64,000 nt of DNA from Chiloscyllium plagiosum. Lineage: Eukaryota. The notes under the pieces were generated by a model that searched no databases, was not told where the DNA came from, and saw only the letters and a list, made by a program, of their open reading frames with translations. Both the position numbers and the translations under genes were made by a program. This document shows, piece by piece, positions 1,137 to 37,627 of this stretch; position 1 is the stretch's first letter, and each line of letters opens with the position of its first letter. Location of the stretch: positions 32,949,947-33,013,946 of the forward strand of contig NC_057725.1 of assembly GCF_004010195.1 (NCBI RefSeq). Direction: 5' to 3'.

Positions 1137-1217
1137 CTTTCTCTTTCGAGTCACCCTCTGCACTTGGTTGTCCATTCCCAACAGAGGCTTCGGGTTGTTC
1201 AGAGACATTCTGTGATC
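1137..1217 (-). CDS. Repeat micro-exon, 81 nt, phase 1/1: (G)SQNVSEQPEASVGNGQPSAEGDSKEK
   Basis: gatgcAG acceptor, GTGAGT donor, open frame. Confidence 0.75.
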
Positions 1218-3055
1218 CTGCATCATCATCATCAAATTATAAAGCAGACAGTGTAAACCCAGCAGTGTTTGTGAGTATGCACTGCATTAACAATGCTTTT
1301 CCGTGACCATGAATTTCAAACTAAACTTATTTGAGTTCAGTGCAACATTCTTGATGAATAAATAATGCTACTTTTCAGCTTAGTTCTGCATTAATTTCTC
1401 TCAATTATTGCAGAGCTGCTGTGCCCGGTGTGTATCATGTCCTCATCTGCTGTTCATTCTCTACATTTAACTGAGTCAGCTATTATATGAAGAATTCTAT
1501 AAGTTGGTGATTGAAATGGTCCTTGCATGCACTCGTGAAATGTCTGGAAGTCGGTTAAATCAGTGAATAAATCATTTCATTTGGTGTAAGGATAGATCCG
1601 TGGAGATCACAGGAGAAAATGCAATCAGTTCTTAAATTTGAGAAGGCAGATGATTACCTAGCCCATATGTTGACAACTATGAAACTATGTCTTTGCAAAA
1701 ATGATATTCTGGCATTTCCAAGATGGAATTTGCTCACGATTTGGCATGTGGGGCGAGTACACAAAAATCTGGCGTATAGAAGTTGTGCTGAATAATGTAT
1801 GCTGGATTTGCAACAATAGTGCAAAGGACGAAAAGTGGAGATGCTTTCTGAAGGCTGTTTCAGTTTGAATATTTTGCAGAACAAGGAGAAACTCCACCAG
1901 GTACAACATGGTAAGTAAACCTGCTTTGGTGCAATGTCGAACCAGTATTGCTGATGGCTGTATCTGTCATTTCACAAGGAGACCAACGTGTCCCTGTTTC
2001 GCCTGCAGGCATCTTAGCGGGCCAAGGTTCCCCTAAGTGCTGATGCTGTCGCAGACACAAAGACGGCTTTTGCCATCAGGAATATGGTCTTGGGTTATAT
2101 GAAAATTGTGCATATTTCCCTTTGAGTCCATTCATGTTGAATGGCACTGCTTTCTCGACCATGGGCTTTCATCTAATATAGCTGACCATGGAAATCTCTG
2201 TACTTTGGAAATCATATCAAATGATAAAAGATCATTGAAATGTGTAGGAACACTTGATCACTGCATGCTCGAATACCTATCTGTGTTTGAGGGCTTTACG
2301 TTGTTTGTGCAGGATTTCGCACACTGTTCAGTGAGTGATTCAGGAGTTAATCAGGCAGATTTGGACGGATTATTGTGAGTTGGATGATGGCAATGTCGTG
2401 AATGGTTGGGACAAAACGGTTTCTCCAAATGAAAATATTCACATCAACAACATGAGTGAGATTGTTAAAGATTTTGCTGAATATCATTCGTGGTCTAATG
2501 ACGACATTGCAACATGCACCTGCTCTGCTTCCATAGGTCTCTAAACACCTAAGTGGATTCCACATGATCCGTTATCAGGACAACACATCCCTCCTTTTTA
2601 CTTTCCCCACCCGCATCTCAAACCCAATGCCTAGTGAAAAACCTAGTGCATGTTACCTCAGACATGTTAACCATTGATGAAAGTGTCAGGGGACATGTTT
2701 GTTTTACAAGTGATTGCACTAATTTGTGAAGACACAATGTAAGGCAACTAACGGAATTGGAGATTGTCAAAAAGTAAGTTTTGCCCCTTGAAACAAAAAG
2801 ACCAGCTGATGCATGCAGCCAAGGAATAACATGCATGACGTTGAGAGCACACTGAATTAAAATGTTGTGGCAGGTGGGAAGGATGTACAGTACACCACAA
2901 AGGCAAACTTTAAACATGTATTGTCATCTCAATACCAATTTCTCAGGTCTTGAAGAAATTCTACTGTCTGAGTTTTGCATTAGGTCAGGTCTTTCAGCCA
3001 GATGATTACTTTTGAATTTACGTTTTAAACGCATTTTTAAATTTTCACAACTCAC

Positions 3056-3136
3056 CTTTCTCTTTCGAGTCATCCTCTGCACTTGGTTGTCCATTCCCAA
3101 CAGAGGCTTCGGGTTGTTCAGAGACATTTTGTGATC
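3056..3136 (-). CDS. Repeat micro-exon, 81 nt: (G)SQNVSEQPEASVGNGQPSAEDDSKEK
   Basis: AG/GTGAGT boundaries, open frame (inside ORF 3045..3242). Confidence 0.75.
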
Positions 3137-3586
3137 CTGCATCATCATCATCAAAATATAAAGCAGACAGTGTAAACCCAGCAGTGTTTGTGAGTATGAA
3201 CTGCATTAACAATGCTTTTCCGTGACCATGAATTTCAAACAAACCTTATTTGAGTTCAGTGCAACTGTCTTGATGAACAAATAATGCTACTTTTCAGATT
3301 AGTTCTGCATTAATTTCTCTCAATTATTCCAGAGCTGCTGTGCCTGGTGTGTATCATGTCCTCATCTGCAGTTCATTCCCTCCAATTACCTGAGTCAGCT
3401 ATTATATGAAGAATTCTATAAATTGGTGATTGAAATGGCCCTTGCATGCACTCATGAAATGTCTGGAAGTGGTTAAATCAGTGAATAAATCATTTCATTT
3501 GGTGTAAGGATAGATCCATGGAGTTCACAGGGGAAAATGCAATCATTTCTTGAATTTGAGAAGGCAGGTGATTACCTCCTCCACAT

Positions 3587-3624
3587 GATTCCTGAAGAAG
3601 GGCCTGTGCCCGAAACGTCGAATC
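3587..3624 (+). ncRNA. Minimal type-I hammerhead ribozyme motif in a Penelope-like element end (element 3585-3665, runs into gap)
   Basis: GATTC-CTGAAGA-A-GGGC-CTGT-GCCC-GAAAC-GTC-GAATC: 5-bp stem I, CUGANGA core, 4-bp stem II, GAAA, palindromic ACGU and GUC site. Confidence 0.7.
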
Positions 3625-3665
3625 TCCTGTGCCCTGGATGCTGCCTGACCTGCTGTGCTGTTCCA

Positions 3666-3748
3666 NNNNNNNNNNNNNNNNNNNNNNNNNNNNNNNNNNN
3701 NNNNNNNNNNNNNNNNNNNNNNNNNNNNNNNNNNNNNNNNNNNNNNNN
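3666..3748. other. Assembly gap
   Basis: Run of N. Confidence 1.
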
Positions 3749-5207
3749 TGGAGTTCACAGGAGAAAATGCAATCAGTTCTTAAATTTGAGAAGGCAGATG
3801 ATTACCTAGCCCATATGTTGACAACTATGAAACAATGTCTTTGCAAAAATGATATTCTGGCATTTCCAAGATGGAATTTGCTCAAGATTTGGCATGTGGG
3901 GCGAGTACACAAAAATCTGGCATATAGAAGTTGTGCTGAATAATGTATGCTGGATTTGTAACAATAGTGCAAAGGACGAAAAGTGGAGATGCTTTCTGAA
4001 GGCTGTTTCAGTTTGAATATTTTGCAGAACAAGGAGGAACTCCACCAGGTACATCGTGGTAAGTAAACCTGCTTTGGTGCAATGTAGAACCCAGTGTTGC
4101 TGATGGATGTAATTGTCATTTCACAAGGAGACCAACGTGTCCCTGTTTCGCCTGCCGGCATCTTAGCGGGCCAAAGTTCCCCTAAGTGCTGATGCTGTCG
4201 CAGACACAAAGACGGCTTTTGCCATCAGGAATATGGTCTTGGGGTTATATGAAAATTGTACATATTTCCCTTTGAGTCCATTCATGTTGAATGGCACTGC
4301 TTTCTCGACCAAGGGCTTTCATCTAATATAGCTGACCATGAAAATCTCTGTACTTTGGAAATCATATCAAATGATAAAAGATCATTGAAATGTGTAGGAA
4401 CACTTGAACACTGCATGCTCGAATACCTGTCTGTGTTTGAGGGCTTTGTGTTGTTTGTGCAGGATTTCGCACAGTGTTCAGTGAGTGATTCGGGGGTTCA
4501 TCAGGCAGATTTGCTCTGATTATTGGTAGTTGGATGATGGCAATGTCGTGAATGGTTGGGACAAAATGGTTTCTCCAAATGAAAATATTAACATCAACAA
4601 CATGAGTGAGATTGTTAAAGATTTTCCTGAATATCATTCGTGGTCTAATGATGACATTGCAACATTCACCTGCTCTGCTTCCATAGGCCTCTAAACACCT
4701 GTGTGGATACCACATGCTCCGTTATCAGGACAACACATCCCTCCTTTTTACTTTCCCCACCCGCATCTCAAACCCAGTGCCTCGTGAAAAACCTAGTGCA
4801 TGTTACCTCAGACATGTTAACCATTGATGAAATTGTCAGGGGATATGTTTGTTTTACAAGTGATTGCACTAATTTGTGAAGATACAATGTAAGGCCACGA
4901 ACAGAACTGGAGATTGTCAAAAAGTAAGTTTTGCCCCTTGAAACATAAGGACCAGCTGATGCATGCAGCCAAGGAATAACATGCATGCCGTTGTGAGCAC
5001 ACTGAATTCAAGTGTTGTGACAGGTGGGAAGGATGTATAGTACACCACAAAGGCAAAGTTAAAACATCTATTGTCATCTCATAACCAATTTCTCAGGTCT
5101 TGAAGAAATTCCACTGTCAAGAGTTTTGCATTAGGTCAGGTTCTTTCAGCCAGATGATTACTTTTGAATTTACGTTTTAATCATGTTCTTAAATTGTCGC
5201 AACTCAC

Positions 5208-5273
5208 CTTTCTCTGCACTTGGTTGTCCATTCCCAACAGAGGCTTTGGATTGTTCAGAGACTTTCTGTGATC
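5208..5273 (-). CDS. Repeat micro-exon, 66 nt (in-frame 15-nt deletion): (G)SQKVSEQSKASVGNGQPSAEK
   Basis: AG/GTGAGT boundaries retained; length is a multiple of 3. Confidence 0.72.
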
Positions 5274-5735
5274 CTGCATCATCATCATCAAGATATAAAG
5301 CAGACAGTGTAAACCCAGCCGTGTTTGTGAGTATGAACTGCATTAACCATGCTTTTCCATGATCATGAATTTCGCACAAAATTTATTTGAGTTCAGTGCA
5401 GCTGTCTTGATGAACAAATAATGCTACTTTTCAGATTAGTTCTCAATTATTGCAGAGCTGCTGTGCACGGTGTGTATCACGTACTCGTCTGCTCTTCATT
5501 CCCTTCATTTACCTGAGTCAACTATTGTATGATGGATTCTATAAGTTGGTGATTGAAATAGTCCTGGCATGCACTGGTGAAATGTTTGGAAGTGGTTAAA
5601 TCAGTGAATAAATCACTTTGTTTGGTGTAAGGATAGATCCGTGGAGTTCACAGGAGAAAATGCAATCAGTTCTTGAATTGGAGAAGGCAGATGCTTACTT
5701 AGATTAGATGACTTACAGTGTGGAAACAGGCCCTT

Positions 5736-6261
5736 NNNNNNNNNNNNNNNNNNNNNNNNNNNNNNNNNNNNNNNNNNNNNNNNNNNNNNNNNNNNNNNNN
5801 NNNNNNNNNNNNNNNNNNNNNNNNNNNNNNNNNNNNNNNNNNNNNNNNNNNNNNNNNNNNNNNNNNNNNNNNNNNNNNNNNNNNNNNNNNNNNNNNNNNN
5901 NNNNNNNNNNNNNNNNNNNNNNNNNNNNNNNNNNNNNNNNNNNNNNNNNNNNNNNNNNNNNNNNNNNNNNNNNNNNNNNNNNNNNNNNNNNNNNNNNNNN
6001 NNNNNNNNNNNNNNNNNNNNNNNNNNNNNNNNNNNNNNNNNNNNNNNNNNNNNNNNNNNNNNNNNNNNNNNNNNNNNNNNNNNNNNNNNNNNNNNNNNNN
6101 NNNNNNNNNNNNNNNNNNNNNNNNNNNNNNNNNNNNNNNNNNNNNNNNNNNNNNNNNNNNNNNNNNNNNNNNNNNNNNNNNNNNNNNNNNNNNNNNNNNN
6201 NNNNNNNNNNNNNNNNNNNNNNNNNNNNNNNNNNNNNNNNNNNNNNNNNNNNNNNNNNNNN
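5736..6261. other. Assembly gap (begins inside a SINE tail at 5695-5735)
   Basis: Run of N. Confidence 1.
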
Positions 6262-7360: not shown

Positions 7361-7441
7361 CTTTCTCTTTCGAGTCATCCTCTGCACTTTGTTGTCCATT
7401 CCCAACAGACGCTTCAGGTTGTTCAGAGACATTCTGTGATC
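7361..7441 (-). CDS. Repeat micro-exon, 81 nt: (G)SQNVSEQPEASVGNGQQSAEDDSKEK
   Basis: AG/GTGAGT boundaries, open frame. Confidence 0.75.
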
Positions 7442-7912
7442 CTGCATCATCATCATCAAAATATAAAGTAGACAGTGTGAACCCAGCAGTGTTTGTGAGT
7501 ATGAACTGCATTAACAATGCTTTTCCGTGACCATGAATTTCAAACTAAACTTATTTGAGTTCAGTGCAGCTGTCTTGATGAACAAATAATGCTACTTTTG
7601 AGATTAGTTCTGCATTAATTTCTCTCAATTATTGCAGAGCTGCTTTGCACGGTGTGTATCACATCCTCGTCTGCTGTTCATTCCCTCCATTTACCTGAGT
7701 CAACTATAGTATGAAGAATTCTATAAGTTGGTGATTGAAGTGGTCCTGGCATGCACTTGTGAAATGTCTGGAAGTGGTTAAATCAGTGAATAAATCATTT
7801 CATTTGGTGAAAGGAAAGATCTGTGGAGTCCACAAGTGAAAATGCAATCAGTCCTTGAATTTGAGAAGGCAGATACTTACTTAGATTAGATGACTTACTG
7901 TGTGGAAACAGG

Positions 7913-8412: not shown

Positions 8413-8932
8413 GCTTCTAAACACCTGTGTGGATATCACATGCTCCGTTATCAAGACAACACATCCCTCCTTTTTACTTTCCCCACCCGCGTCTCATACC
8501 CAATGCCTAGTGAAAAACCTAGTGCATGTTACCTCGGGAATGTTAACCATTGATGAAAGTGTCAGGGGACATGTTTGTTTTACAAGTGGTTGCACTAATT
8601 TGTGAAGACACAATGTAAGGCCACTAACGGAACTGGAGATTGTCAAAAAGTAAGTTTTGCCCCTTGAAACATAAGGACCAGCTGATGCATGCAGCCAAGG
8701 AATATCATGCATGCTGTTGTGGGCACACTGAATTCAAATGTTGTGACAGGTGGGAAGGATGTATAGTACACCACAAAGGCAAAGTTTAAACATGTATTGT
8801 CATCTCAATACCAATTTCTCAGGTCTTGAAGAAATTCCACTGTCAGAGTTTTGCATTAGGTCAGGTTCTTTCAGCCAGCTGATTACTTTTGAATTTACGT
8901 TTTAATCACGTTTTTAAAATGTCACAACTCAC

Positions 8933-9013
8933 CTTTCTCTTCCAAGGCCTCCTCTGCACTTGGTTGTCCATTCCCAACAGAGGCTTTCGATTGTTCAGAG
9001 ACTTTCTCTGATC
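8933..9013 (-). CDS. Repeat micro-exon, 81 nt: (G)SEKVSEQSKASVGNGQPSAEEALEEK
   Basis: AG/GTGAGT boundaries, open frame. Confidence 0.75.
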
Positions 9014-11145: not shown

Positions 11146-11226
11146 CTTTCTCTTTCGAGTCATCCTCTGCACTTGGTTGTCCATTCCCAACAGAGGCTTC
11201 GGGTTGTTCAGAGACATTCTTTGATT
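11146..11226 (-). CDS. Repeat micro-exon, 81 nt: (E)SKNVSEQPEASVGNGQPSAEDDSKEK
   Basis: AG/GTGAGT boundaries, open frame. Confidence 0.75.
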
Positions 11227-11837: not shown

Positions 11838-11918
11838 CTTTTTCTTTCGAGTCATCCTCTGCACTTGGTTGTCCATTCCCAACAGAGGCTTCGGGTTGTT
11901 CAGAGACATTCTGTGATC
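11838..11918 (-). CDS. Repeat micro-exon, 81 nt: (G)SQNVSEQPEASVGNGQPSAEDDSKEK
   Basis: AG/GTGAGT boundaries, open frame. Confidence 0.75.
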
Positions 11919-14051: not shown

Positions 14052-14114
14052 CTTTCTCATTTGCATCATCCTGTGCAACAGTACCTTCAAGGTGTTCAGA
14101 TTCATTCTGTGATC
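14052..14114 (-). CDS. Repeat micro-exon, 63 nt (in-frame 18-nt deletion): (G)SQNESEHLEGTVAQDDANEK
   Basis: gatgcAG acceptor, GTGAAT donor, multiple of 3, no stop. Confidence 0.7.
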
Positions 14115-14994: not shown

Positions 14995-17900
14995 ATAGAA
15001 CATAGAACAATACAGTGCAGAACAGATATTGCGCCGACTTGTGAACTATTCTCAGCTTGTCCCCCTACATTACCCCAAAATCATCCATGTGCTTATCTAA
15101 GGATTGATTAAATCTCCCTTTTGTGGCTGAGTTGACTACATTAGCAGGTAGGGCCTTTCACGCCCTTACCACTCTCTCTGCAAAGAACTTTCCTCTGACA
15201 TCTGTCTTAAATCTATGACTCCTCAATTTATAGTTATGCCCTCTTGTACAAGCTAATGTCATCATCCTAGGAAAACGTCTTTCACTGCCTACCCTATCTA
15301 ATCTCTGATCATCTTGTATGTCTCTATCAAATCCCCCCTGAGCCGCCTTCTTTCCAATGATAACAGACCCAAGTCTCTCAGCCTTTCCTCATAAGACCTT
15401 CCCTCCAGACCAGGCAACATACTGGTAAATCTTCTCTGCACCTTTTCCAATGCTTCCACATCCTTCCTATGATGGGGCGACCAGGACTGTACACAATATT
15501 CCAGGTGTGGCCGCACCAGCGTTTTGTATAGTTGCAGCATGACATTGCGGCTCTGGAACTCAATCCCTCTACCAATGAAACCTAACACACCGTATGCCTT
15601 CTTCACAGCACTATCCACCTGGGTGGCAACTTTCAGTGATCTATGCACATGGACTCCAAGATCCCTCCACACATCCACGCTACCAAGAATCTTTCCATTG
15701 ACCCAGTACTCTGCCTTCCTGTTATTCTTCCTAAAGTGCATCAACTCACAGTTAGCTGCATTGAACTCCATTTGCCATCTTTCCGCCCAATTCTGCACTT
15801 TATCCAAGTCCCCCCGCAACCTGTAACATTCTTCCAAACTGTCCACTACTCCACCGATTTTAGTGTCGTCTGCAAATTTACTAATCCATCCACCTATGCC
15901 TGCATCTAAGTCATTTATAAAAATGACAAACAGCAGTGGTCCCAAAACAGATCCTTGTGGCACACCACTAGTAACTGGACTCCAAACTGAATATTTTCCA
16001 TCAAACACCACTCGCTGCCTTCTTCCAGAAAGCCAGTTTCTAATCCAAACTGCTAAATCACCCTCAATTCCATGCCTCTGCATTTTCTCCATCAGCCTAC
16101 CATGTGGAACCTTATCAAAGGTTTACTGAAGTCCATGTATACCACGTCAACTGCCCTATCCTCATCTACATGGTTGGTCACCTTCTCAAAAGACTCAATG
16201 AGGTTTGTGAGACACGACCTGCCCTTGACGAAACCATGTTGACTATCTGAAATCAAATTGTTGCTTGCTAGATGATTATAAATCTTATCTCTTATAATCC
16301 TTTCCAAACCCTTTCCTACAACAGAAGTAAGGCTCACTGGTCTATAATTACCTGGGTCATCACTGCTGCCCTTCTTGAACAATAACACATTTGCAATCCT
16401 CCAGTCCTCAGGTACTAAACCTATAGATAATGACGATTCAAATATCAAAGCCAACGGCTCTGCTATCTGGTCCCTAGTTTCCCAGAGAATCCTCAGATAA
16501 ATCCCATCCGGCCCAGGGGACTTGTCTACTTTCAGTCCTTCTAGAGTTGATAACACCTGTGCGTAACTAACTCGATCCTTTCTAGTCTAATATCTTGTAC
16601 CTCATTCTTCTCCTCTACAATATTCTCCTTTTCCTGAATGAACACCGATGAGAAATGTTCATTTAGCACCTCTCCGATCACTATAGGCTCCATACTCAAC
16701 TTCCCACTTCTTTCTTTGACTGGCCCTATTCCTCCTCTCACCATCCTTTTATTCCTCACATGCCTATAGAAAGCTTTAGGGTTCTCCTTTATTCTATTTG
16801 TTAAAGACTGCTCATGTCTGCTCTTTGCTCTTCTTAACTCTCTCTTTAAATCCTTCCTAGCTGATCTGTAACTCTCCATCATCTCATCTGTACCATCTTG
16901 CCTCATTAACACATAAGCCTCCTTCTTCTTCTTAACTAGAGATGCAATTTCTGCAGTAAACCACGGTTTCCTTACCTTATCACTTCCTCCCTGCCTGACA
17001 GGGACATACCTATCAAGGACACGCAATATCTGTTCCTTAAACCAGCACCACATTTTGATTGTCTGTATCCCCTGCATTTTGCTACCCCATTCTATGCATC
17101 CTAATTCTTGCCTAATCGCATTATAAACGCCCTTGCCCAATCAATAACTCTTGACCTGTGGCATATACCTATCCCTTTCCATCGCTAATCTAAACGTAAC
17201 TGAAATATGGTGACTCTCTTCTAAGTCCTCACCTACAAATGAATCAAACACCTGGCCTGATACGTTGCCAAGCACCAGATCCAGTGTGGCCTCCCCTCTT
17301 GTCAGCCCTTCAATATCCTGTGTCAGGAAACCCTCCTGTATACATTGGATAAAAACTGATCCATCCGACGTACTACAGCTATAACATTTCCAGTCAATGT
17401 TGGGGAAGTTAAAGTCCCCCATAATGACCACCCTGTTCCTTTCACTCCTACTCAGAATAATTTTGCTAATCCTCTCTTCCACTTCCCTGGAACTCTGCGG
17501 AGGCCTATAAAAAACTCCAAGCAGTGTAACCTCTCCTGTCTTGTTTCTAACCTCAGCCCACACTACCTCAGTAGACGAGTCCTCAGCAAAAATTCTCTCA
17601 GCCACCGTTATATTATCTTTGACTAACAAGGCCACACCTCCCCCTCTTTTACCGCCTTGCCTGTTTTAATGAAAGATCTAAACCCTGGAACCTGCAACAT
17701 CCATTCTTCACCCTGCTCTATCCATGTCTCTGAAATGGCCAAAACATCGAAGTCCCAGATACCTATCCATGCTGCAAGCTCACCTACCTTATTTCAGATA
17801 CTTCTGGCATTGAAGTAAACACACTTCAAACCAGTTTGCCGTCTGCCAGCATATTCCTGTGACCCTGAAATCCTGTCCCTGTCCTTCCTACTCTCATCCT

Positions 17901-20093: not shown

Positions 20094-20174
20094 CTTCCTC
20101 TTTTGAGTCATCCTTTGCATTTTGTTGTGCATTCCCAACATGCGATTCAATTTGTTCAGAGGAACTCTGTGGTC
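20094..20174 (-). CDS. Repeat micro-exon, 81 nt: (G)PQSSSEQIESHVGNAQQNAKDDSKEE
   Basis: AG/GTGAGT boundaries, open frame. Confidence 0.75.
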
Positions 20175-21989
20175 CTGCATTATCATCTTCAAAATTTAAA
20201 ATAACCAGTGTAAACCCAGCAATGTTTGTGAGTAGAAACTGCATTGACAATACTTTTGTGTGATCATGAATTTCACACAAAACTTACTTGAGCTCAGTGC
20301 AGATGTCCCTATGGGCAAATGATGCTACTTTTCAGATTAGTGCTGCATTAATGTTCTCTCAATTATTACAGAGCTGTTGCTCACTGTAAATATTACACCC
20401 TAGACTTCTGTTCATGCCTTCCATTTACCTGAGTCAACTATTGCATGATGAACTCTATAACTCTGTGATTGAAATGGTCCTGGCATGTACTTGTGAAATG
20501 TTTTGAAGTGGTTAAATCATTGAATAAATCATTTAGTTGGCTGTAAGGGTTGATCAGTGGAGTTCTCAGAAGAAAATGCAATCAGTTCTTGAATTTGAGG
20601 TAGCAGATTTTTACCATACCCAAACACTGTTGACTATGACACTGCATCTTTTTAAAAATGATATTCTGGCATTTCCAAGATAGAATTTGCTCAAGGCCTA
20701 GAGTGGGGACAAAAATCTGACACATAGAAATTTTGCTGACTAATGTAAACAGGATTTGCAACAATAGTGTGGAGGACCAAACAGGGAGATGCTTTCTGAT
20801 GAGTGTTCCAGGCTGAAAATGGAGAACATGGAGGTGCTCCACAAACGTGGGTATGTAAACCTACTACGATGCAATATGGAACCCAGTGTTGCTGATGGCT
20901 GAAGCTGTCATTTCACAAGGAGAACAAACTATCCACAATTCAACTCCATTGATCTTGGTGTGCTTACGTTTCCCTGAGTGCTGATGCTGTCACAGCCATG
21001 AAGATGGTTTTTACTACCAGGAAACTGCTCATGTCTTACGTGGAAATTGTACATATTTTCCTTTGAGTCCATACATATTGAATGGCACTGATTTCTAAAC
21101 CAAGGGCTTTCATCTTGCACAGCTGATCACAGCTCTGAGATATCTCTGTACTTTGGGAAATCATATCCAATGCTGAAAGACATTGAAAGTGTAGAAACAC
21201 TTGAACACTGCATGCTTGAATAAGTGCTAGTGTTTGAGGGCTTTATGTTTTTTTGTCACAGTGCTCAGTCAGTGATGAAGGAGACAAACAGACAAATGTA
21301 GATTTGAAGACAGATTGTTACGAGTTGGATGATGGGCAAGTGTTGAATAGTGTGATTGGGACGAAATGGCCTCTCTACATGAACAAAATCACATCAACAT
21401 GAGTGAGATTGTTAAAGATTTTCCTGAACACCATTTATGGTCTTGGAATGACATTGCAACATTCACCCTGCTCTGCTTCCATCAGCTTCTAAACACCAGT
21501 GTAGATACCATGTGCTCCCCTCAGAGCACAGCACATCCCTCCCTTTTAATTTCTTCACTCGCACCCCTCGTGAAAACCTTAGCGCTTGCGACCTCAGAAT
21601 TTTTAATCATCCACAAAAGGTTCAGAGCACATGTTTGTTTCACAAGTGACTACACTAATTTGTGCAGTGACAATATAAGGCCACTAAAGGAGCTGGAGAT
21701 TCTCTTTAAGTACATTTTGCCCCTCGTAATATAAGGACCTACTGACGCACGCAGCTGATGAACAACACACATGTCATTGAGAGCACAGTGAAATCAAGTA
21801 ATGTGACAGGCGGGAACAATGTACAGTGCACCTCATTTGCAAAAGCAACATTTAAACATGTGCTGTCATCTCAATAAAATTTATCAGGTCTTGGAACAAA
21901 CTCCATTGTCAGAATTATGCATTAGGTCAGGTCTTTCACTGAGATGTGTACTTTTTAATTGCTTGCATTTTTAAATTGTAGCAACTCAC

Positions 21990-22070
21990 CTTTCTGTTTC
22001 GAGTCATCCTGTGCTTTTTGTTGTCCATTCCCAGAAGTGCCTTCACGTTGTTTAGATTCATTCTGTGATC
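21990..22070 (-). CDS. Repeat micro-exon, 81 nt: (G)SQNESKQREGTSGNGQQKAQDDSKQK
   Basis: AG/GTGAGT boundaries, open frame. Confidence 0.75.
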
Positions 22071-23917: not shown

Positions 23918-23998
23918 CTTTCTCTTTCAAGACATCCTCTGGATTTTGTAGTCCATTCCCAAATGTGCCTTCAGGTTGTTTAGATTCATTCTGTGATC
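23918..23998 (-). CDS. Repeat micro-exon, 81 nt: (G)SQNESKQPEGTFGNGLQNPEDVLKEK
   Basis: AG/GTGAGT boundaries, open frame. Confidence 0.75.
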
Positions 23999-25827: not shown

Positions 25828-25908
25828 CTTCCTCTTTTGAGTCATCCTTTGCATTTTGTTGTGCATTTCCAACAGTGGCTTCAGGTTGTTCAGAGAAACT
25901 CTGTGGTC
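25828..25908 (-). CDS. Repeat micro-exon, 81 nt: (G/R)PQSFSEQPEATVGNAQQNAKDDSKEE
   Basis: AG/GTGAGT boundaries, open frame. Confidence 0.75.
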
Positions 25909-29632: not shown

Positions 29633-29713
29633 GTTTCTCTTTCGAGTCATCCTGTGCATTTTGCTGTCCATTTCCAACAGTGCCTTCAGGTTGTTCATAT
29701 TCATTCTCTGACC
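29633..29713 (-). CDS. Repeat micro-exon, 81 nt: (G)SENEYEQPEGTVGNGQQNAQDDSKEK
   Basis: gttgcAG acceptor, GTGAGT donor, open frame; first intact repeat in transcript order. Confidence 0.75.
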
Positions 29714-30597
29714 CTGCAACATCAACATTAAAATAGAAAGCAGACAGTGTAAACCAAGTAGCGTGCTTGAGTTCAAACTGTATTGACAAAGCTTTTGTGT
29801 TATCATGAATTTCACACAAATCTTATTTGGATTCAGTGCAGCTGTCTCTGTGGACAAATGATGTTACTTTTCAGATTAGTGCTGCATTAATGTTCTCTCA
29901 GTTATTGCAGAGCTGTTGCTCATTATGAGTCTTACACCTCAGTATGCTGTTCATGCCATCCGTTTACCTGAGTCAACTATTATATGAAGAATTGTATAAC
30001 TTGGTGATTGAAATGGTCGTGGCATGCCCTTGTGAAAATTTTTGAACTGGTTAAATCATTGAATAAATCATTTAGTTTGGTGTAAGGATAGATCAGTGGT
30101 GTTCTCAGAATAAAATGGAACCAGTTCTTGATTTTGAGAAGGCAGATTTTGGCCTTGCCCAAATGATGTTAACTGTAAACTGCATCTATTTCAACATGAT
30201 GTTCTGGCATTTCCATGATAGAATTTGATGAAGATCTGGAATGTGGAATGAACCCACATAAACCTGACACAAAGGAATTGTGCTGAATAACGTACATAGG
30301 ATTTGCAACAAGAGTGCAAATGACCTGAAGGGGAGATGCTTTCTGAAGCATTTTTCAGGCTGAATATTCTGGAGAATATGGATGTCCTCCACCATTTACA
30401 ATGTGGTAAGTAAACCTGCTTTGGTGCAATGTAGGACCCAGTGTTGCTGATGGCTGGAGCTGTCATTTTCAGAAGGAGACCAACATGTCCTCCATTTGGC
30501 CCCAGTGATCTTGATTCTGCTGAGTGCTGATGTTGTTGCAGACACAAAGATGTCTTTTGCCATCAGGAACCTGGTCATGGGTTACGTAGAAATTGTA

Positions 30598-32025
30598 GTT
30601 TGGCTAACATGGTACCATTGTTTAAGAAAGGTAGTAATGACAAGCCAGGGAACTATAGATCAGTGAGCCTGACGTCAGTGGTGGGCAAGTTGTTGGAGGG
30701 AATCCTGAGTGACAGGATTTACATGTATTTCGAAAGGCAAGAACTGATTCGGGATAATCAACATGGCTTTGTGCATGGGAAGTCATGTCTCACAAACTTT
30801 TAAAAGTTTTTTTTTAAAAGTAACAAAGAAGATTGATGAGGGCAGAGTGGTAGATGTGATCTATATGGACTTTAGTAAAGCAATCTACAAGCTTCTCCAT
30901 GGGAGACTGGTTAGCAAGGTTAGCTCTCATGGAATACAGGAAGAACTCACATTTGAATACAGAAATAGCTCGAAGAACGAAGACAGAGGGTGGTGGTGGT
31001 GGAGGGTTATTTTTCAGACTGGAGGCCTGTGACCAGTGAAGTGCCACAAGGATCGGTGTTGGGTCCACTACTTTTCATCATTTATATAAATGATTGGGAT
31101 GTGAGCATAAGAGGTATATTTAGTAAGTTTGCAGATGACACCAATATCGGAGATGTCGTGGACAATGAAGAAGGTTACTTCGGATTGCAACAGGATCTTG
31201 AACAAAAGGCCAAGGGGCTGAGAAGTGACAGACAGAGTTTAATTTAGATAAATGTGAGGTGCTGCATTTTGGGAAAGCAGATCTTATCAGGACTTATACA
31301 CTTCATGGTAAGGTCCTAGGGAGTGCTGCTGAACAAAGAGACCTTGGAGTGCATTGCTCCTTGAAAGGAGAGTCACAGATAGAAAGGGTAGTGAAGAAGA
31401 CACTTGGTGTGCTTTCCTTTATTGGTCAGAGTATTAAGTAAGGGAGTTGGGAGGTCATGCTGCGGCTGTACAGGACATTAGTTCGACCAATTTTGGAATA
31501 TTACATGCAATTCTATCAGAAGGATGTTGTGAAATTTGAAAGGGTTCAGAAAAGTTTGACATGGATGTTGCCAGGGTTTGAGGATTTGAGCTACAGGGAG
31601 AGGCTGAAGAGGCTGGGGTTGTTTTCCCTGGAACGTCGAAGGCTGAGGGGTGACCTTATGGAGGTTTATGAAATCATGAGGGGCAGGGATAGCTTAAAGA
31701 GGCAAAGTCTTTTCCCAGGGGTGGGGGAGAACTAGAGGGCATAGGTTTAGGGTGAGAGGGGAAAGACATAAAAGGGATCTAAAGAGCACTTTTTCAAGCA
31801 GAGGGTGGTACGTGTGTGGAATTAGCTGCCAGAGGAAGTGGTGGAACTTGTACAATCACAATATTTAAAAGGCATCTGGATGGATACATGAATAGGAAGG
31901 GTTTAGAGGGATATGGGCCAAGGGCTGGCCAATGGGACTAGATTAGTTTGGGATATCTGGTCAGCATGGATGAGTTGACCAAAGTGTCTGTTTCCATGCT
32001 GTACATCTCTCTGACTCTATGACTT
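30598..32025 (+). mobile_element. 5'-truncated CR1 LINE with intact 3' end
   Basis: RT motifs ([13 protein letters not shown]), ctctatga-type tail; unit sequence resumes in register. Confidence 0.96.
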
Positions 32026-32685
32026 TACATATTTCCCTTTGAGTTCATGTGTATTGAATGGCACTGATTTCTAGACCAAGGGCTTTCACCTTGTATAGCT
32101 GACCACAGCTCTGGGAAATCTCTCTACTTTGGGCAATCATATCAAATGATAAAAAGTCATTGAAACATGTAGAAACACTTGAATGCTGCATGCTTGAACA
32201 GCTGCCAATGTTTGAGGGCTTGAAGATGTCTGTGCAAGTTTTGGCACAGTGTTCAGTGAGTGATTAAGGAGTTAATCAGACAGGTTTGGATTTGAGGACT
32301 GATAGTTGGGTATTGGAAGATGGGGATGTTGTGAATGGTGTGATTGGGATGAAATGCTGTTGTACACAAACTCAGTCACATCAGCAACATGAGTGAGATT
32401 GTTAAAGGTTTTCCTGAACAGCATTCATGGTCTTGGAATGACATTGCAATATTCACTTGCTCTGCTTCCATCAGCTTCAAAACATCTGTGTGCATACCAC
32501 GTGCTCCACTCAGAGGGCAGCACATCCCTCCATCTGGATATCAAACACAATACCTTGTGAAAAACTTAATGCATGCTACCTCAGACCTTTTAACCATTGA
32601 TGAAAGTGTCAAACCACATATTTGTTTTACAAGTGACTGCACTAATTTGTGTAGTGACAATGTAAGGCCACTAAAGGTGCTGGTA

Positions 32686-33031: not shown

Positions 33032-33158
33032 TGTAATGTAAGGTCCTGCTGATACATGCAGCCAATGAACAACATGCATGCCGTTGATAGCACACTGAAA
33101 TCAAGTAATGTTGCCGCTAGCAAAAATGTACAATACACCTCTTTTGCAAAGTCAAGGT

Positions 33159-33229
33159 TTAAACACATACTGTCATTTGGTTTGTATTTGCAGCGTTATT
33201 TTCCTGAAGCTTAATGACATTCAGGGATT
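33159..33229 (-). pseudogene. Diverged repeat exon, donor deleted, reads to stop: (E)SLNVIKLQENNAANTNQMTVCV*
   Basis: Acceptor tttttgtgatgatgtAG retained; 3' end of exon and donor deleted; TAA at 33159-33161. Confidence 0.5.
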
Positions 33230-35063
33230 CTACATCATCACAAAAATACAAAATAGACAGTATAACCCCATTAATATAAGGGAGTAGAAACTACAGTGAT
33301 AATGATTGATCACACAAATCTTATTTGTGCTCAGTCCAACTGTCTCTATGGAAAAATAATGATTTTGCTCCAGGCATGCATTTGTGGGGTATGTTAAAGT
33401 CCTCAAAGCATTGTACAAATTGTGCAGTTTGTTAGAGGGACAGGTGAATAGCTTTCTTAGATTGAAATGCAATCAGTTCTTGAATTTGACGATTTTAGAA
33501 TGTTAGCTTCCCCGGCTGTTGTGGCATCTATGAAATTGGGTGTAATGATAGATCAGTTCAGTTCTCAGGCAAAAATGCAATGAGTTCTTGAATTTGAGAA
33601 GCTGGGAATTTTACCTTGCCAGAATGATGTCAACTGTGAAACTGTATCTTTTTACCAATGACGTTCTAATATTTCTAAGATGAAATTTTCTCAAGAAGTG
33701 GCATGGGAGACCAACACACAATAATCTGACACAGAGAATCTGCTGATTGATGTATATATGGTTTGCTCCATAGTGCAAAGGAGCAAAAGGAGAGATCCTT
33801 TCTGATGTGTCTTTAGGGGTGAATATTTGGGAAAACAGGGAGGACCTCCATCAGTTACAACATGGAAGTAAACCTGCTTTTGTGAAATATAGGACCCAGC
33901 GTTGCTGATGGCTGAAGCAGTCATTTCACATGGAGACCAAGCAGTCCTCCATTTAACCTCAGTGACCTTGGTGGGCTGAGGTTCCCCTGAGTGCTGATGC
34001 TGTCACTACCATGAGGATGGCTTTTGCCATCAGGAAACTGACCACAATTTAGGTAGAAATTGTACATATTTTCAACTGAGATCAGGCATGCTTTTTAGAC
34101 CAAGGACTTTCATCTTTCAAAGCTGACCACAGCTCTCGTAAATCTCTGTACTTTTGGGAATCATATCAAATGGTGAAAGATTTTTGAAAAGTGCACAAAC
34201 AGTTAAACTCTGCATGGTCAGAATGCTGCCAGTGTTTGAGGTCTGTGGGTTGTGGCTGCAAGTTTTGATACACAGTTCACTGTGTGATGAATGGGTTCAG
34301 CAGATAAGTTGAAATTTCAACACTGATTGTTGGTAGCTAGTTGGTAGCAATACAGAGAATGTGGTTAATGGTGTACTTGGCAGGAAATCTCCTTTGGAGG
34401 TGAATACAGTCACATTGATAAAGTGAGTGGGATTGTTGAAGTTCTTCCTGAACAGTAGTCATGGTCTTGGAACAACATTATGACATTCACCTGCTCTGTT
34501 TCCATCAGCTTTTAAATGCATGTGAGAATACTACATACACCCCACAGAACACAGCACACCTGGCCTTTTTAACTTCACCACCTCAATCTCTACTTCAGTG
34601 CTTCATAAAAACCTTAGCAGATTTACCTCACACATTTTAATTGTTGTTAGAAGTGTCTGAGAATAAGTTTAGTTTGCACTTGATTGCACTAGTTTTTGCA
34701 GGAACAATGTAAGGCCACTATAGGAGCTGCTTTAAGTAACTGTAGCCTCTCACAATATAAGGACCTGCCAATGCAGGTCCTGAACAACATGGATATCACT
34801 GGCAGTGCACTGAAATCAAATATTACAGCTGGTAGCAAACATGTACAGTGCACCAGTGATGCACAGACAAGGATGAAACATACTGTCAGGTCAATACCAA
34901 TTTACCAGACCTTGAACCTAATTCCATTATCAGAAGTTTGCATTAGATCAGGTATTATACTCAGAGAATTACTTCTTAATTGGTCACACTTTAAATCACA
35001 GCAATTAATGTTTCTCTATCAAGTTATTCTCTGTATCGTTTTTGTGTCCCAAGCAATTCTTTG

Positions 35064-35089
35064 TTAACTTTCAGTGACTTCCTGTGACT
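35064..35089 (-). pseudogene. Most diverged repeat exon with early stop: (E)SQEVTES*
   Basis: Acceptor tttttgatgatgtAG retained; TAA at 35064-35066; donor position no longer GT. Confidence 0.5.
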
Positions 35090-35531
35090 CTACATCATCA
35101 AAAAGATACAAGCTAGATAATGTAAAGCCAATAACATAAAGGAGTAGTGTTTGCAGTGACAATGCAGTGATCACGTAATAATGAATTACAAACATATTTG
35201 TGTGAGCTCAGTGCAAATCATACTACTTTTCAGATTTGTGCTGCATTAATGTTCTCTCTAACATTGCAGAGCTGCTACTCACTGTGTATGTAGCATCCCA
35301 TTAGTCATTTGATGCCATACATTAACCTCAGTCAACATGATTTAACTATTCTTTAAACTATTTGATAACTTTGTGATTCAAATAGCCCTGCAATGCATTT
35401 GCAAAATATCTTAATATGGTCAAACCATTGAATCAATTACATATTTCCTGCAAGGACAGATTAGTGGAATTTTTAGATGGAAATGCCATCAGTTCTCGAA
35501 TTTGAGATTCCAGGAATGATACCTTGCCCAC

Positions 35532-35709
35532 ATAGAGTCATTGAGTTATAAAGTCATAGAGATGTACAGCACGGAAACAGACCTTTCAGATCCAATGTTC
35601 CATGCCAATCAGATATCCTAAATAAATTTAGTCCCATTTGCCAGCATTTGACTAATTCATTCACCCATCCAGATGCCTTTTAAATGTTGTAATTGTACCA
35701 GCCTCCACC
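35532..35709 (-). mobile_element. CR1 3' end remnant marking the right boundary of the array
   Basis: atagagtc-type tail and reverse complement of CR1 3' UTR / FKRHLD region. Confidence 0.75.
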
Positions 35710-36150
35710 CGATGAGGAAGAACGCCTCATCTTCTCCCTCGGAACCTTTCAACCCCTGGACATCAATGTGGACTTCATCAGTTTCCTCACTTCCCCTCCC
35801 CCCCATCTTACCCCAGTTCCAAACTTTCAGCTCAGCTCCATCCTCATGACCTGTCCCACCTGTCAACCTTCCTTCCCACCTCCTCTCCATTCCACTCCAC
35901 TCTCCTCTCCAACCTATCACCTTTACCCCTTCCTCCATCCACCTATTGCAATCCCAGCTAACTTCTCCCCAGCGCCATCCCCTCCTATTTATCTCTCCAC
36001 CCGCAAGGCTTCTAGCCACATTCCTGATGAAGGGATTTTGCCCAGAACATTGATTTTTCTGCTGCTCAGATGCTGCCTGACCTGCTGTGCACTTCCAGAC
36101 CACTCTAATCTTGACTCTAATTTTCAGCATCTGCAGTCCTCACTTTCACC
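35710..36150 (+). mobile_element. Penelope-like element 3' remnant
   Basis: EERLIFSLGTFQPLDINVDF resembles the end of the GIY-YIG domain; pyrimidine-rich UTR; degenerate hammerhead cctgatgaagggattttgccc; same gatgctgcctgacctgctgtgc end as at 3637-3660. Confidence 0.75.
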
Positions 36151-37531
36151 TTTCTGCCTCCTCCTCCCTTCCAGGCAGTGAGGTCCATATTCCCACCACC
36201 TCTAGTGAAAAAAACAAATGTCTTCACATCCCCTCTAAACATGCTGCTGCTGAGCTTAAATTTGACCCCTGTTTGTTGATCCTTCCATCAAGGAAAAATT
36301 TGTTAACGGTCCTAGGATAGCAAACATGTCGGATCCAATGGTTGAGGGAGAGGTTGCTTTGTTGATTTGTTGTGGAAAAGTACTGAGTCCTGGGAGGTGG
36401 AGTGTGCTGTTTGGAGCAGTCAGGGTTGGAATCCAGATCATGATCAAGTGTTTCTTGGCTCAGTGGAGGGGTGGGGTTGTTTGTGGTGTGGCTCCAGAAA
36501 AGGGATGAGGCCACTTGTCAGTCGGAAGTTCAGTTTTACACATAACCCAGGACTTAGAGTAGGTTTTAATCCTCAAAGTTTTCTTGTGTAGCTGCTCAGC
36601 TCAGTTGAATTAGATCCCTCCAACACCAACAACTTTAAATATATTGTCCCAAGTGATCCAGATGCAGGGAATTGTCAACTGGTATTTTCAATTTCATGAG
36701 AAATTTCCTCAGTCTGTTAAGTCAGGATTTCTATACCATTCCCACTTGAAACTCCAATCTGCACTTTTAAAGGACATCCATCCATCAAGATTTCTGGCCA
36801 GTCTCCCTTAGCGACACTGCTAATACTTCCATGAATGGTTGAAGTCACAATGTGCAGATTCAATTCCTAAATGGATGAATAATGATATCCCCCACGTTAA
36901 ATAATACAGAATGCATTTCATCACGTTTTTTGCCTCCATTATCTATTGATCATGATTTTCCTTTCTCAGGAGGGTTTCTCATGTGCAGTTACTGATGGTA
37001 TTAAATGTATGACTTGTCAGATCTCTTTCTTTTCATGACAGTAGTTTCCTAACTAGAAATGTCCACAGTAGAAGTCATTTAAGTGCATTTGTGTATTTTA
37101 TGAAATGCCCCAGAAGTACTAGGTCCATTTGTTAAAGCTGTAATCAAGAAACTGAGCAAATATCTTAACTAAAACATGGAATAGTTTTGATGGAATGGTG
37201 TATTGTGACTGTTGCCATCACATTTGGGCAAGATGAGTATTCATTTTCTCGAAGACAGAAATTTATTGTAAGAAATTCCACACATCTTTCCATCAAAGTA
37301 ATTGAACAATGTAATTGCTCAAAGTTTGAACAATAATTGAACACCAAGAAGACAGTTTAATAATAAATTCTATGGTTCATTGAACAACCAAAAATTGAAG
37401 ATCACAGCTGGGAGGTAGTTAGGTGTTCAGTGATAAGACAAGGGGATAATTAAATAGTTACCCACACGTTAGGGTAGGTTGTTAATTGTCTAACTTTCCA
37501 TGAGTAATGTATAACATAAGCAAGTCCAAAC

Positions 37532-37627
37532 CTTCATTTTTTTCCTCAAGCAGGTTTTGAAGCTCATCAGAAGGTTCACCTTGATTGTTAATACCGGCTT
37601 CAGCATTTGAGAGGGCGTACTTTCCTT
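37532..37627 (-). CDS. NCR3LG1: First cytoplasmic exon, 96 nt, phase 1/1: (E)GKYALSNAEAGINNQGEPSDELQNLLEEKNE
   Basis: T-rich acceptor ending tatgtAG, AAG/GTTTGG donor, open frame continuing the TM exon. Confidence 0.7.

What the first reader, a model, noticed from the sequence alone, without database searches (positions are those of the whole stretch)
1137..37627. A ~1.9-kb macrosatellite is a serial micro-exon array that would give a shark B7-H6-like protein a tail of at least 340 aa of repeats
Seen: every unit has one minus-strand segment bounded by (gat)n-gcAG and GTGAGT/GTGAAT. Thirteen copies (29633, 25828, 23918, 21990, 20094, 14052, 11838, 11146, 8933, 7361, 5208, 3056, 1137) are stop-free, multiples of 3 and phase 1/1. 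This is the same strand and phase as the V, C1, TM and first cytoplasmic exons upstream. The surrounding introns have many arbitrary indels and transposon insertions, none inside an exon. Spliced together they add 11x27+21+22=340 aa of acidic, Ser/Gln/Gly-rich, probably disordered repeat. Known: B7-H6 is the NKp30 ligand, and the human tail is not built from such exon repeats. Inference: tail elongation by exon-plus-intron tandem duplication, with length tunable by exon skipping and copy-number variation. I know of no description of this for a B7 family member but cannot search.
Basis: partly seen in the sequence, partly recalled or inferred. Interest (0 to 1): 0.92.

Follow-up and report, generated by a model that had tools for sequence, protein, structure and literature searches.

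The report
Shark B7-H6-like gene's serial-exon tail
A bamboo-shark immune-ligand gene related to B7-H6 builds its long, acidic intracellular tail from a tandem row of near-identical small exons that are really spliced together in RNA, a design already known from chicken BG genes and already present, under a misleading name, in the public annotation.

Summary
The window has 13 minus-strand segments: 11 of 81 nt, one of 63 nt and one of 66 nt. All are bounded by AG and GT, are multiples of 3 and are open in phase 1. This is the same phase as the V, C1, TM and first cytoplasmic exons.

- **Annotation.** RefSeq protein XP_043561701.1, named "ribosome-binding protein 1-like isoform X18" [Chiloscyllium plagiosum], matches the window's exons exactly. 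It strings V-C1-TM-cyt1 to nine of these exons. Six further isoforms use other subsets.
- **RNA.** Contigs and raw reads show canonical serial splicing of four of the exons.
- **Family.** The ectodomain's best solved relative is human B7-H6, E 3.5e-26.
- **Selection.** It keeps splice signals, frame and openness but not residues. The tail is acidic and predicted to be disordered.

It is not unprecedented. Chicken BG genes, of the B7/butyrophilin family, have tails of 27-37 phase-1 21-nt exons with alternative splicing. A neighbouring paralogue shows 43-aa cassettes.

Open points:
- No leader exon was found.
- The three assembly gaps lie in introns and may hide further units.
- The cyt1-to-array junction rests on the RefSeq model only.

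Verdict: real, and a new variant of a known kind.

The parts
45081..45419 (-). IgV exon (339 nt, phase 1/1)
   Evidence: Pfam V-set. Exact match to XP_043561701.1 residues 1-111. AG/GT bounds.
42940..43296 (-). IgC1 exon (357 nt, phase 1/1)
   Evidence: Pfam C1-set, E 1.8e-13. Exact match to residues 112-230. Bounds.
39794..39895 (-). Transmembrane exon (102 nt), ELRDRSVLGLAIICSMVLVCGLVIGIYIWRKRSK
   Evidence: Present in P0002.
37532..37627 (-). First cytoplasmic exon (96 nt). It is the diverged founding member of the repeat-exon family.
   Evidence: Exact match at P0002 residue 266. Its flanks align to the 1.9-kb unit.
34995..35214 (-). Decayed repeat unit: the exon homologue has lost its GT donor and carries indels
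   Evidence: Skipped by all seven RefSeq isoforms seen.
33146..33261 (-). Decayed repeat unit: partial exon homologue that reads to an in-frame stop
   Evidence: the stop was read by eye from the alignment. Skipped by all seven isoforms seen.
29633..29713 (-). Repeat exon 1 (81 nt)
   Evidence: In 7 of 7 isoforms seen.
25828..25908 (-). Repeat exon 2 (81 nt)
   Evidence: In 6 of 7 isoforms. RNA: X2 joint 23997>25828 and X1 loose ends.
23918..23998 (-). Repeat exon 3 (81 nt)
   Evidence: In 6 of 7 isoforms. RNA joint 22069>23917 in X1, X2 and 2 raw reads of X11.
21990..22070 (-). Repeat exon 4 (81 nt)
   Evidence: In 6 of 7 isoforms. RNA joints on both sides.
20094..20186 (-). Repeat exon 5. 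RNA and RefSeq use an acceptor 12 nt upstream (20186), which adds DDNA in frame.
   Evidence: X1 joint 20186>21990, CT..AC on the + strand. 'DDNAG' in 5 of 7 isoforms.
14052..14114 (-). Repeat exon 6 (63 nt, donor GTGAAT)
   Evidence: In 5 of 7 isoforms. The X2 loose end matches this exon type.
11838..11918 (-). Repeat exon 7 (81 nt)
   Evidence: Its peptide is identical to that of 3056, so the assignment in the models is ambiguous.
11146..11226 (-). Repeat exon 8 (81 nt)
   Evidence: In 6 of 7 isoforms.
8933..9013 (-). Repeat exon 9 (81 nt). It is intact but used by none of the seven isoforms seen.
7361..7441 (-). Repeat exon 10 (81 nt)
5208..5273 (-). Repeat exon 11 (66 nt)
3056..3136 (-). 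Repeat exon 12 (81 nt)
1137..1217 (-). Repeat exon 13 (81 nt). The array continues left of the window: RefSeq adds 3 more repeats and a terminal exon.
15298..17635 (-). Degenerate LINE (endonuclease/RT ORF pieces) inserted in an intron of the array
   Evidence: It breaks the unit alignment at 14994-19181.
30597..32026 (+). LINE RT fragment inserted in an intron
   Evidence: RT-like ORFs. Break in the unit alignment.

Best explanation
The window carries most of a B7-H6-like gene of the whitespotted bamboo shark, on the minus strand: V, C1, TM, then a cytoplasmic tail.

The tail is encoded by a tandem array of ~1.9-kb units. Each unit holds one symmetrical phase-1 exon (81 nt, 27 aa) plus its intron. 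The array most likely grew by repeated tandem duplication of a unit descended from the first cytoplasmic exon; this is inferred from homology of the flanks and from a repeat insertion that several units share at one position.

Because every exon is phase 1/1, any subset can be spliced in frame. Transcripts do join them serially and do skip some (shown).

The product is a long tail: 411 aa in the longest isoform seen, net charge -55, rich in Glu, Ser, Gln, Gly, Lys and Asn. It is most likely intrinsically disordered; this is inferred from composition.

Selection preserves splice signals, reading frame and absence of stops, but not amino-acid identity. What matters is therefore probably the tail's length, charge and composition rather than a folded structure (inferred).

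What the tail binds or does is unknown. I take a length-tunable acidic spacer or scaffold to be the most likely role.
For: Structure:
- 13 of 13 copies have AG/GT bounds, lengths that are multiples of 3, and are open in phase 1.
- The upstream exons have the same phase.

Annotation:
- XP_043561701.1 matches V, C1, cyt1 and 9 repeat exons exactly.
- Six more isoforms carry other exon subsets.

RNA:
- An X1 contig at depth 16.9 shows joints 22069>23917 and 20186>21990, both CT..AC on the + strand, which is GT..AG on the gene strand.
- That contig's loose end matches the 3' end of exon 25828.
- 2 raw reads of X11 show 22069>23917.
- An X2 contig at depth 53 joins 25828, 23918, 21990 and then a 14052-type exon.
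- X1 had been picked because it holds 0.25 of the words of the V-C1 stretch. That is about the share of the stretch that the two exons make up (about 0.26 by the bounds).

Family:
- Human B7-H6 is the best solved match over V+C1, E 3.5e-26. TAPBPR scores 5e-17 and CD276 5e-13.
- The ectodomain is 43% identical to nurse-shark B7H6.

Selection:
- 1 change in the 13 splice-signal columns, against about 0.8 per column elsewhere; empirical P about 0.002.
- P(all 13 copies open | 69 neutral substitutions on the tree) = 0.036.
- Exon indels: 2 of 2 are multiples of 3, against 5 of 22 in the flanks.
- Two older units without selection have decayed.

Tail properties:
- Hydropathy 0.315 against a Uversky boundary of 0.461; pI 4.24.
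Against: - The exon is no better conserved than the upstream intron: 0.852 against 0.809 changes per column. Codon positions 1, 2 and 3 carry equal changes, so nothing shows constraint on the protein sequence.
- Openness is partly compositional: 12 of 13 copies are open in another sense frame and 13 of 13 in one antisense frame.
- None of the 7 isoforms seen has a signal peptide, and I found no leader exon between 45.4 and 64 kb. A membrane protein is therefore not proven.
- The cyt1 > 29713 junction, and the junctions across the three assembly gaps, rest on RefSeq models only. A search for short transcript-derived peptides spanning cyt1 found nothing.
- Isoform diversity in a near-identical array can be inflated by ambiguous read mapping.
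- X1 and X2 are labelled RNA only by guess. Their spliced contigs are what shows they hold RNA.
Confidence: 0.82

Rival explanations
1. The exons are spliced, but the locus is a transcribed pseudogene or a non-membrane product. It has lost its leader exon, and the tail array is carried along without function.
For: All 7 isoforms seen start at an internal Met of the V exon. No leader-like exon was found upstream by similarity or by a hydrophobic-ORF scan. There is no codon-position bias in the exons.
Against: The V exon keeps a good acceptor with a pyrimidine tract. A 500-N gap lies 2.5 kb upstream of V, and the window ends at 64 kb, so the leader may simply be unseen. Splice signals, frame and openness are kept beyond neutral expectation. 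Paralogues and relatives in other species have leaders. Isoforms X1-X11, X13 and X17 were not retrievable.
Confidence: 0.12
2. Most of the array is young, neutral duplication. The exons are included only because their splice sites have not yet decayed. The apparent isoform repertoire is largely an artefact of mapping short reads to near-identical units and of a collapsed, gapped assembly.
For: Units 1137-11918 are about 94% alike around the exon. Three gaps lie in that part. Exon and intron diverge equally. Exons 11838 and 3056 encode identical peptides.
Against: The older, 76-82% alike units (20094-29713) are also all intact, and they are the ones shown spliced in RNA. The two oldest units did decay. 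The splice columns are significantly conserved. A related organism also expresses the array (X2).
Confidence: 0.15
3. The repeat exons belong mainly to a different transcription unit, for example one with an internal promoter that gives a tail-only 'ribosome-binding protein 1-like' product, and join V-C1-TM only in computed models.
For: I have no read across cyt1 > 29713. RefSeq's name for the gene ignores the Ig domains. Thirteen isoform numbers (X1-X11, X13, X17) were not seen and escaped both length-limited searches.
Against: Strand and phase are the same. All 7 models seen include V-C1-TM-cyt1. cyt1 is itself a member of the repeat family. Run X1 holds V/C1 exon words as well as the spliced repeat exons.
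Confidence: 0.05

Closest known systems
Chicken BG (B-G) genes, butyrophilin/B7 family (Front Immunol 2018, PMC5938342, passages read; PLoS Genet 2014, PMC4046983, start of abstract only)
   Same: An IgSF ligand-type gene of the extended B7 family. Its cytoplasmic tail is encoded by a long series of short exons, each with the first codon split 1+2 (phase 1). Exon number differs between genes, and alternative splicing changes tail length. The genes sit in rapidly evolving multigene clusters.
   Different: [quoted passage not shown] Here the exons are 81 nt (27 aa), rich in Pro, Gly, Ser and acidic residues, with no heptad pattern and probably disordered. They sit in 1.9-kb units that carry transposon insertions. 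BG has only an IgV domain; this gene has V+C1 and is nearest to B7-H6.
Human B7-H6 / NCR3LG1 and nurse-shark B7H6 (UniRef name, P0183)
   Same: V-C1 ectodomain. Human B7-H6 is the best solved-structure match, E 3.5e-26 over residues 4-217. Identity to nurse-shark B7H6 is 43% over the first 262 residues.
   Different: Orthology is not shown. Another C. plagiosum gene, LOC122557766 (P0185), resembles nurse-shark B7H6 more in its N-terminus and post-TM region. Nurse-shark B7H6 has Ig-like domains after its hydrophobic segment, not 27-aa repeats. From recall, not from any call: the human tail is a single gag-related segment with ITIM-, SH2- and SH3-type motifs.
Neighbouring paralogue LOC122557767 of C. 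plagiosum (RefSeq 'retinitis pigmentosa 1-like 1' / 'myb-like protein X' / 'midasin-like' isoforms X1-X10)
   Same: V-C1-TM plus a long acidic repetitive tail, on the same 76-Mb scaffold. Its 10 isoforms differ by cassettes of 17, 24, 43, 46, 86 and 129 aa.
   Different: The repeat period is 43 aa. There is no significant BLASTP similarity between the tails.
Titin PEVK exon arrays (recalled, no call)
   Same: Serial short symmetrical exons, each encoding one ~28-aa disordered repeat, with extensive exon skipping that tunes length.
   Different: Titin is a muscle spring protein, unrelated in sequence and cell biology.

Membership tests
B7-H6 (NCR3LG1)-like B7 family member | N-terminal IgV followed by an IgC1 domain | tested here: met
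   Pfam V-set and C1-set. One exon per domain, both phase 1.
B7-H6 (NCR3LG1)-like B7 family member | Closer to B7-H6 than to other B7 or IgSF proteins | tested here: met
   PDB sequence search of P0002: B7-H6 3.5e-26, TAPBPR 5e-17, CD276 5e-13. 43% identity to nurse-shark B7H6. No phylogeny was made, so orthology is open.
B7-H6 (NCR3LG1)-like B7 family member | Type I membrane protein: signal peptide plus a single TM | tested here: inconclusive
   A TM exon is present. No leader exon was found, and the 7 models seen lack a signal peptide. A gap and the window's edge may hide it.
B7-H6 (NCR3LG1)-like B7 family member | Binds NKp30 | not testable with these tools
   This needs a binding assay. 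Contact residues were not examined.
BG-type serial micro-exon cytoplasmic tail | Tail encoded by many short exons, all phase 1/1 | tested here: met
   13 exons in the window, plus 3 more to the left in RefSeq. Splicing is shown for four of them.
BG-type serial micro-exon cytoplasmic tail | 21-nt exons encoding heptads of a coiled coil | tested here: not met
   The exons are 81, 66 or 63 nt. Each 27-aa unit contains Pro and several Gly. Only 14 of 411 tail residues are F, W, Y, I, L or M.
BG-type serial micro-exon cytoplasmic tail | Tail length varied by exon number and alternative splicing | tested here: met
   Seven isoforms of 591-675 aa with different exon subsets. X2 joins 21990 to a 14052-type exon. 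Variation between individuals was not tested.
Macrosatellite (kb-scale tandem repeat) | Head-to-tail units of about 1-2 kb in many copies | tested here: met
   A 1928-nt unit matches from about 160 to 35500 in one orientation, at 70-82% identity. TRF missed it because its period limit is 500.

The most novel reading that the evidence does not exclude
Elasmobranch B7-H6-like genes form a cluster in which each paralogue has independently inflated a different cytoplasmic module: 27-aa exons here, 43-aa cassettes next door, ~26-30-aa acidic repeats in rays, and ~167-aa repeats in Heterodontus and Scyliorhinus. Selection acts on splice-ability and length rather than on sequence. On this reading, tail length or charge would be a tunable, diversifying functional parameter of an NK-ligand-type family, convergent with chicken BG. 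That would point to an unrecognised intracellular role for such ligands, for example reverse signalling, cytoskeletal anchoring or a decoy for pathogen effectors.
Probability: 0.3. Interest if true: 0.65.

Novelty: new variant of a known kind. Interest (0 to 1): 0.45.

Why it matters
**Annotation.** RefSeq names this gene and its neighbour after unrelated low-complexity proteins (ribosome-binding protein 1-like, retinitis pigmentosa 1-like 1, myb-like X, midasin-like). This hides a cluster of B7-H6-like genes from anyone searching shark immune genes by name.

**Evolution.** The locus is a clean, datable example of protein elongation by tandem exon-plus-intron duplication. It contains living units, decayed units and a founder exon side by side. 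Selection is visible on splice signals and frame but not on residues.

**Convergence.** The design parallels chicken BG tails and suggests that long modular tails recur in B7-type ligands. That raises a testable question: what does the intracellular part of such ligands do?

Tried and rejected
- TRF with its 500-nt period limit did not see the 1.9-kb array. BLASTN of one unit did.
- I expected the exons to be better conserved than the introns. They are not, so I turned to splice columns, stop avoidance and indel phase.
- The leader exon was sought with the N-termini of 8 relatives. The best hit, at 47607-47621, is a chance match that ends in a stop. It was also sought with a scan for Met plus a hydrophobic stretch plus a phase-1 GT. 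That gave 0 candidates at the strict threshold and 27 weak ones at the lax threshold, none convincing.
- A search for short transcript-derived peptides spanning cyt1 (60-aa ORF across the exon) found no candidate. This says nothing about longer or shorter proteins.
- The tail-only search found only 3 clusters, all C. plagiosum isoforms, among proteins of 355-1129 aa. Tails of 8 relatives gave no BLASTP hit at E <= 0.01. So the 27-aa repeat is not demonstrably shared outside Chiloscyllium.
- Literature. Searches listed no paper on repeat-exon tails of shark B7-H6. These are listings and abstract starts only. Search terms were: B7H6 + shark + NKp30; B7H6 + NKp30 + Xenopus + cytoplasmic tail; B7H6 + cartilaginous fish + cytoplasmic; B7-H6 + elasmobranch.
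- Flajnik et al. 2012 (PMC3709836) and Ohta & Flajnik 2015 (PMC4594805), the papers most likely to describe shark B7H6 tails, are not held. A description there cannot be excluded. Supplements were not consulted.
- Structure prediction and Rfam searches were judged uninformative and were not run.

Full report
**What is in the sequence.**
- Eleven are 81 nt, one is 63 nt (14052-14114) and one is 66 nt (5208-5273).
- All 13 are preceded by AG. In 12 the acceptor is (GAT)n-type followed by GCAG.
- All 13 are followed by GT: GTGAGT in 12 and GTGAAT in one.
- All are multiples of 3 and open in the phase-1 frame. The typical peptide is GSQNVSEQPEASVGNGQQSAEDDSKEK.
- BLASTN with one copy finds no copy on the plus strand and one extra partial copy at 33216-33261.

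A 1928-nt unit (21990-23917) matches head to tail from about 160 to about 35500 at 70-82% identity. The alignment is broken at about 14994-19181, 27509-29214 and 30597-32026. The first and third breaks hold LINE pieces; the second was not examined. TRF missed the array because of its period limit.

**Upstream exons.** Four exons lie upstream, all AG/GT-bounded and phase 1/1:

| Exon | Coordinates | Evidence |
|---|---|---|
| V | 45081-45419 | Pfam V-set |
| C1 | 42940-43296 | Pfam C1-set, E 1.8e-13 |
| TM | 39794-39895 | hydrophobic segment followed by basic residues |
| cyt1 | 37532-37627 | first cytoplasmic exon |

The intron flanks of cyt1 align to the repeat unit, so cyt1 is the most diverged member of the same family. 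Between cyt1 and the first intact repeat lie two decayed units. The one at about 33.2 kb reads to an in-frame stop in the alignment (read by eye). The one at about 35.1 kb has lost its donor and carries indels.

**Assembly gaps (tested first, as asked).** All three gaps inside the finding lie in introns.
- On the left, each starts just after unit position about 525, inside inserted sequence that the reference unit lacks.
- For gaps 2 and 3 this is a ~330-nt repeat insertion that is complete in unit 8933.
- On the right, the sequence resumes at unit positions 465, 830 and 1404.
- No exon is cut and orientation is kept.
- Whether whole units are hidden is unknown. Gap 1's flanks even overlap in unit coordinates.
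- The exon count and the adjacency 3056 / 5208 / 7361 / 8933 are therefore properties of the assembly only.
- I did not fill or look up the N stretches.

**Is it more than chance?** Openness alone is weak evidence. The segment is purine-rich, so another sense frame is open in 12 of 13 copies and one antisense frame in 13 of 13.

The exon is not better conserved than its upstream intron: 0.852 against 0.809 parsimony changes per column. Codon positions 1, 2 and 3 carry identical numbers of changes.

Three other measures do depart from neutrality:
- **Splice signals.** The 5 acceptor and 8 donor columns carry 1 change in all, against about 0.8 per column elsewhere. Resampling windows of the same alignment gives an empirical P of about 0.002.
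- **Stop avoidance.** With 69 neutral substitutions placed on the unit tree, all 13 copies stay open in 3.6% of 5000 simulations. The mean number open is 8.6.
- **Indel phase.** Both exon indels are multiples of 3, against 5 of 22 in the flanks.

The two decayed older units show what happens without such selection. So selection keeps the exons spliceable and open but does not care which residues they encode.

**The gene is already modelled.**
- A phmmer search with the V-exon ORF returned a 645-aa protein. It is XP_043561701.1, [quoted passage not shown].
- The window's V, C1, cyt1 and nine repeat-exon translations occur in it exactly and in genomic order.
- They are followed by three more repeats and a terminal segment that must lie left of the window.
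- Six further isoforms (X12, X14, X15, X16, X19, X20; 591-675 aa) use other subsets.
- 12 of the 13 window exons appear in at least one of the 7 models. Exon 8933 appears in none.
- Exon 20094 is entered 12 nt early, which adds DDNA in frame, because the (GAT)n tract reads as Asp codons.
- All 7 models start at an internal Met of the V exon, with no signal peptide.
- Isoforms X1-X11, X13 and X17 escaped both length-limited searches.

**RNA.** Run X1 is from the same organism and is kept as contigs. It holds 0.25 of the sampled words of the V-to-C1 stretch, about the share of that stretch that the two exons make up (about 0.26 by the bounds). Laying four runs on 20050-26000 gave the following:
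- **X1.** One 258-nt contig at depth 16.9 covers 23917-24000, 21990-22069 and 20104-20186. Its joints, 22069>23917 and 20186>21990, have CT..AC ends, which is GT..AG on the gene strand. An 11-nt loose end matches the 3' end of exon 25828.
- **X11.** This is raw poly(A) single-cell RNA reads with about 2% of the run read. Three reads were laid, and 2 of them show 22069>23917.
- **X12.** No reads were laid.
- **X2.** This is a related organism. One contig at depth 53 joins 25828, 23917-23997 and 21989-22069. It then runs into an exon whose loose end matches the 14052 type, so 20094 is skipped or absent there. A second, low-depth X2 contig has odd joints that I cannot interpret.
- **Intron coverage.** X1 also has intronic contigs at depth 2-6.

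Serial splicing of four of the exons is thus shown. The cyt1 > 29713 junction and the junctions in the gapped, younger part are not; they rest on RefSeq models. A search for short peptides spanning cyt1 found nothing.

**What family.** Over V+C1, the best solved relative of the RefSeq product is human B7-H6: E 3.5e-26, residues 4-217. TAPBPR follows at 5e-17 and CD276 at 5e-13.

| Relative | Identity | Region compared |
|---|---|---|
| Protein that UniRef calls nurse-shark B7H6 (1092 aa) | 43% | residues 1-262 of P0002 |
| Mustelus protein | 63% | residues 1-262 of P0002 |
| Cetorhinus 'NCR3LG1-like' protein | 64% | V-exon ORF |

Two further B7-H6-like genes sit on the same scaffold: LOC122557766 and LOC122557767. 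'B7-H6-like' is justified. Orthology is not shown.

**The tail.** In isoform X12 the tail is 411 aa.
- E, S, Q, G, K, N, A and D make up 84% of it.
- Net charge is -55 and pI is 4.24.
- Only 14 residues are aromatic or large aliphatic (F, W, Y, I, L, M).
- Mean hydropathy is 0.315, against a charge-hydropathy boundary of 0.461.

This predicts disorder. There are two tyrosines, and neither sits in a YxxL/I motif.

**Comparison with what is known.** Chicken BG genes belong to the butyrophilin family, which the PLoS Genet 2014 abstract places in the B7 family (listing). Their cytoplasmic tails are encoded by 27-37 exons of 21 nt. The first codon of each exon is split 1+2. Exon numbers differ between genes, and alternative splicing alters tail length (PMC5938342, passages read). 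That is the same genomic logic.

The shark array differs in four ways:
- exon size: 81 nt;
- likely structure: disordered rather than coiled coil;
- unit size: 1.9 kb, with transposon insertions;
- ectodomain type: V+C1, nearest to B7-H6.

Modular tails are common in this shark family.
- The neighbour LOC122557767 has 10 isoforms that differ by cassettes of 17, 24, 43, 46, 86 and 129 aa.
- Relatives in Mobula, Rhinoraja, Scyliorhinus and Heterodontus have tails of about 430 to 1250 aa with periods of 26, 30 and 167 aa.
- The repeats themselves share no detectable similarity.

**Verdict.** It is not categorically new: the models are already in RefSeq under misleading names, and the principle is known from chicken BG. 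I found no paper that describes this array, but the two papers most likely to bear on shark B7H6 tails are not held. I file it as a new variant of a known kind, of moderate interest.

Noticed in passing
P0183 (nurse-shark B7H6), P0185 (C. plagiosum LOC122557766), P0015, P0007, P0017, P0033, P0180: Many relatives carry a conserved ~135-aa segment directly after the hydrophobic 'TM' segment. In several of them a series of C1-like Ig domains follows. The ~135-aa segment has no Pfam match above threshold in the two of these scanned (P0007, P0033). It recurs in a ~167-aa repeat 7-8 times in Heterodontus XP_067902348. Ig-like domains on the apparent cytoplasmic side are odd. Other first readers flagged the same thing 170-275 kb away in this genome.
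   Followed up: partly
window 20175-20186 and the (GAT)n tract before every repeat exon: The (GAT)n just upstream of each acceptor reads as in-frame Asp codons. In unit 20094 a change creates an AAG acceptor 12 nt upstream. That acceptor is the one used in RNA (X1 joint at 20186) and it adds DDNA. Acceptor slippage by whole codons seems to be built into the unit.
   Followed up: partly
window 9438-9766; also just left of the gaps at 5736 and 7913: The same ~330-nt repeat insertion sits at unit position about 525 in units 5208, 7361 and 8933. It therefore predates the duplication of those units. Two of the three assembly gaps begin inside it.
   Followed up: partly
window 45420-64000 (minus strand), gap 47963-48462: No signal-peptide exon could be found for the gene. 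The region is dominated by LINE RT fragments on both strands. The leader may lie in the gap or beyond the window.
   Followed up: partly
window 12447-12773: A 161-nt tandem duplication (2.0 copies, 97% alike) lies inside one intron of the array.
   Followed up: no
X2 record 8 on window 20094-20352, 24157-24305 and 25828-25856: A low-depth contig of the related organism joins the end of exon 25828 to an intronic 149-nt piece, and then to exon 20094 with its upstream intron. One of the joints is non-canonical. It could be a different unit arrangement in that species or unprocessed RNA.
   Followed up: no
RefSeq names of P0002, P0041 and its cluster, and P0011: Automatic naming labels these V-C1-TM genes 'ribosome-binding protein 1-like', 'retinitis pigmentosa 1-like 1', 'myb-like protein X', 'midasin-like' and 'DDB_G0290685-like'. 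The low-complexity tails evidently drive the naming.
   Followed up: yes
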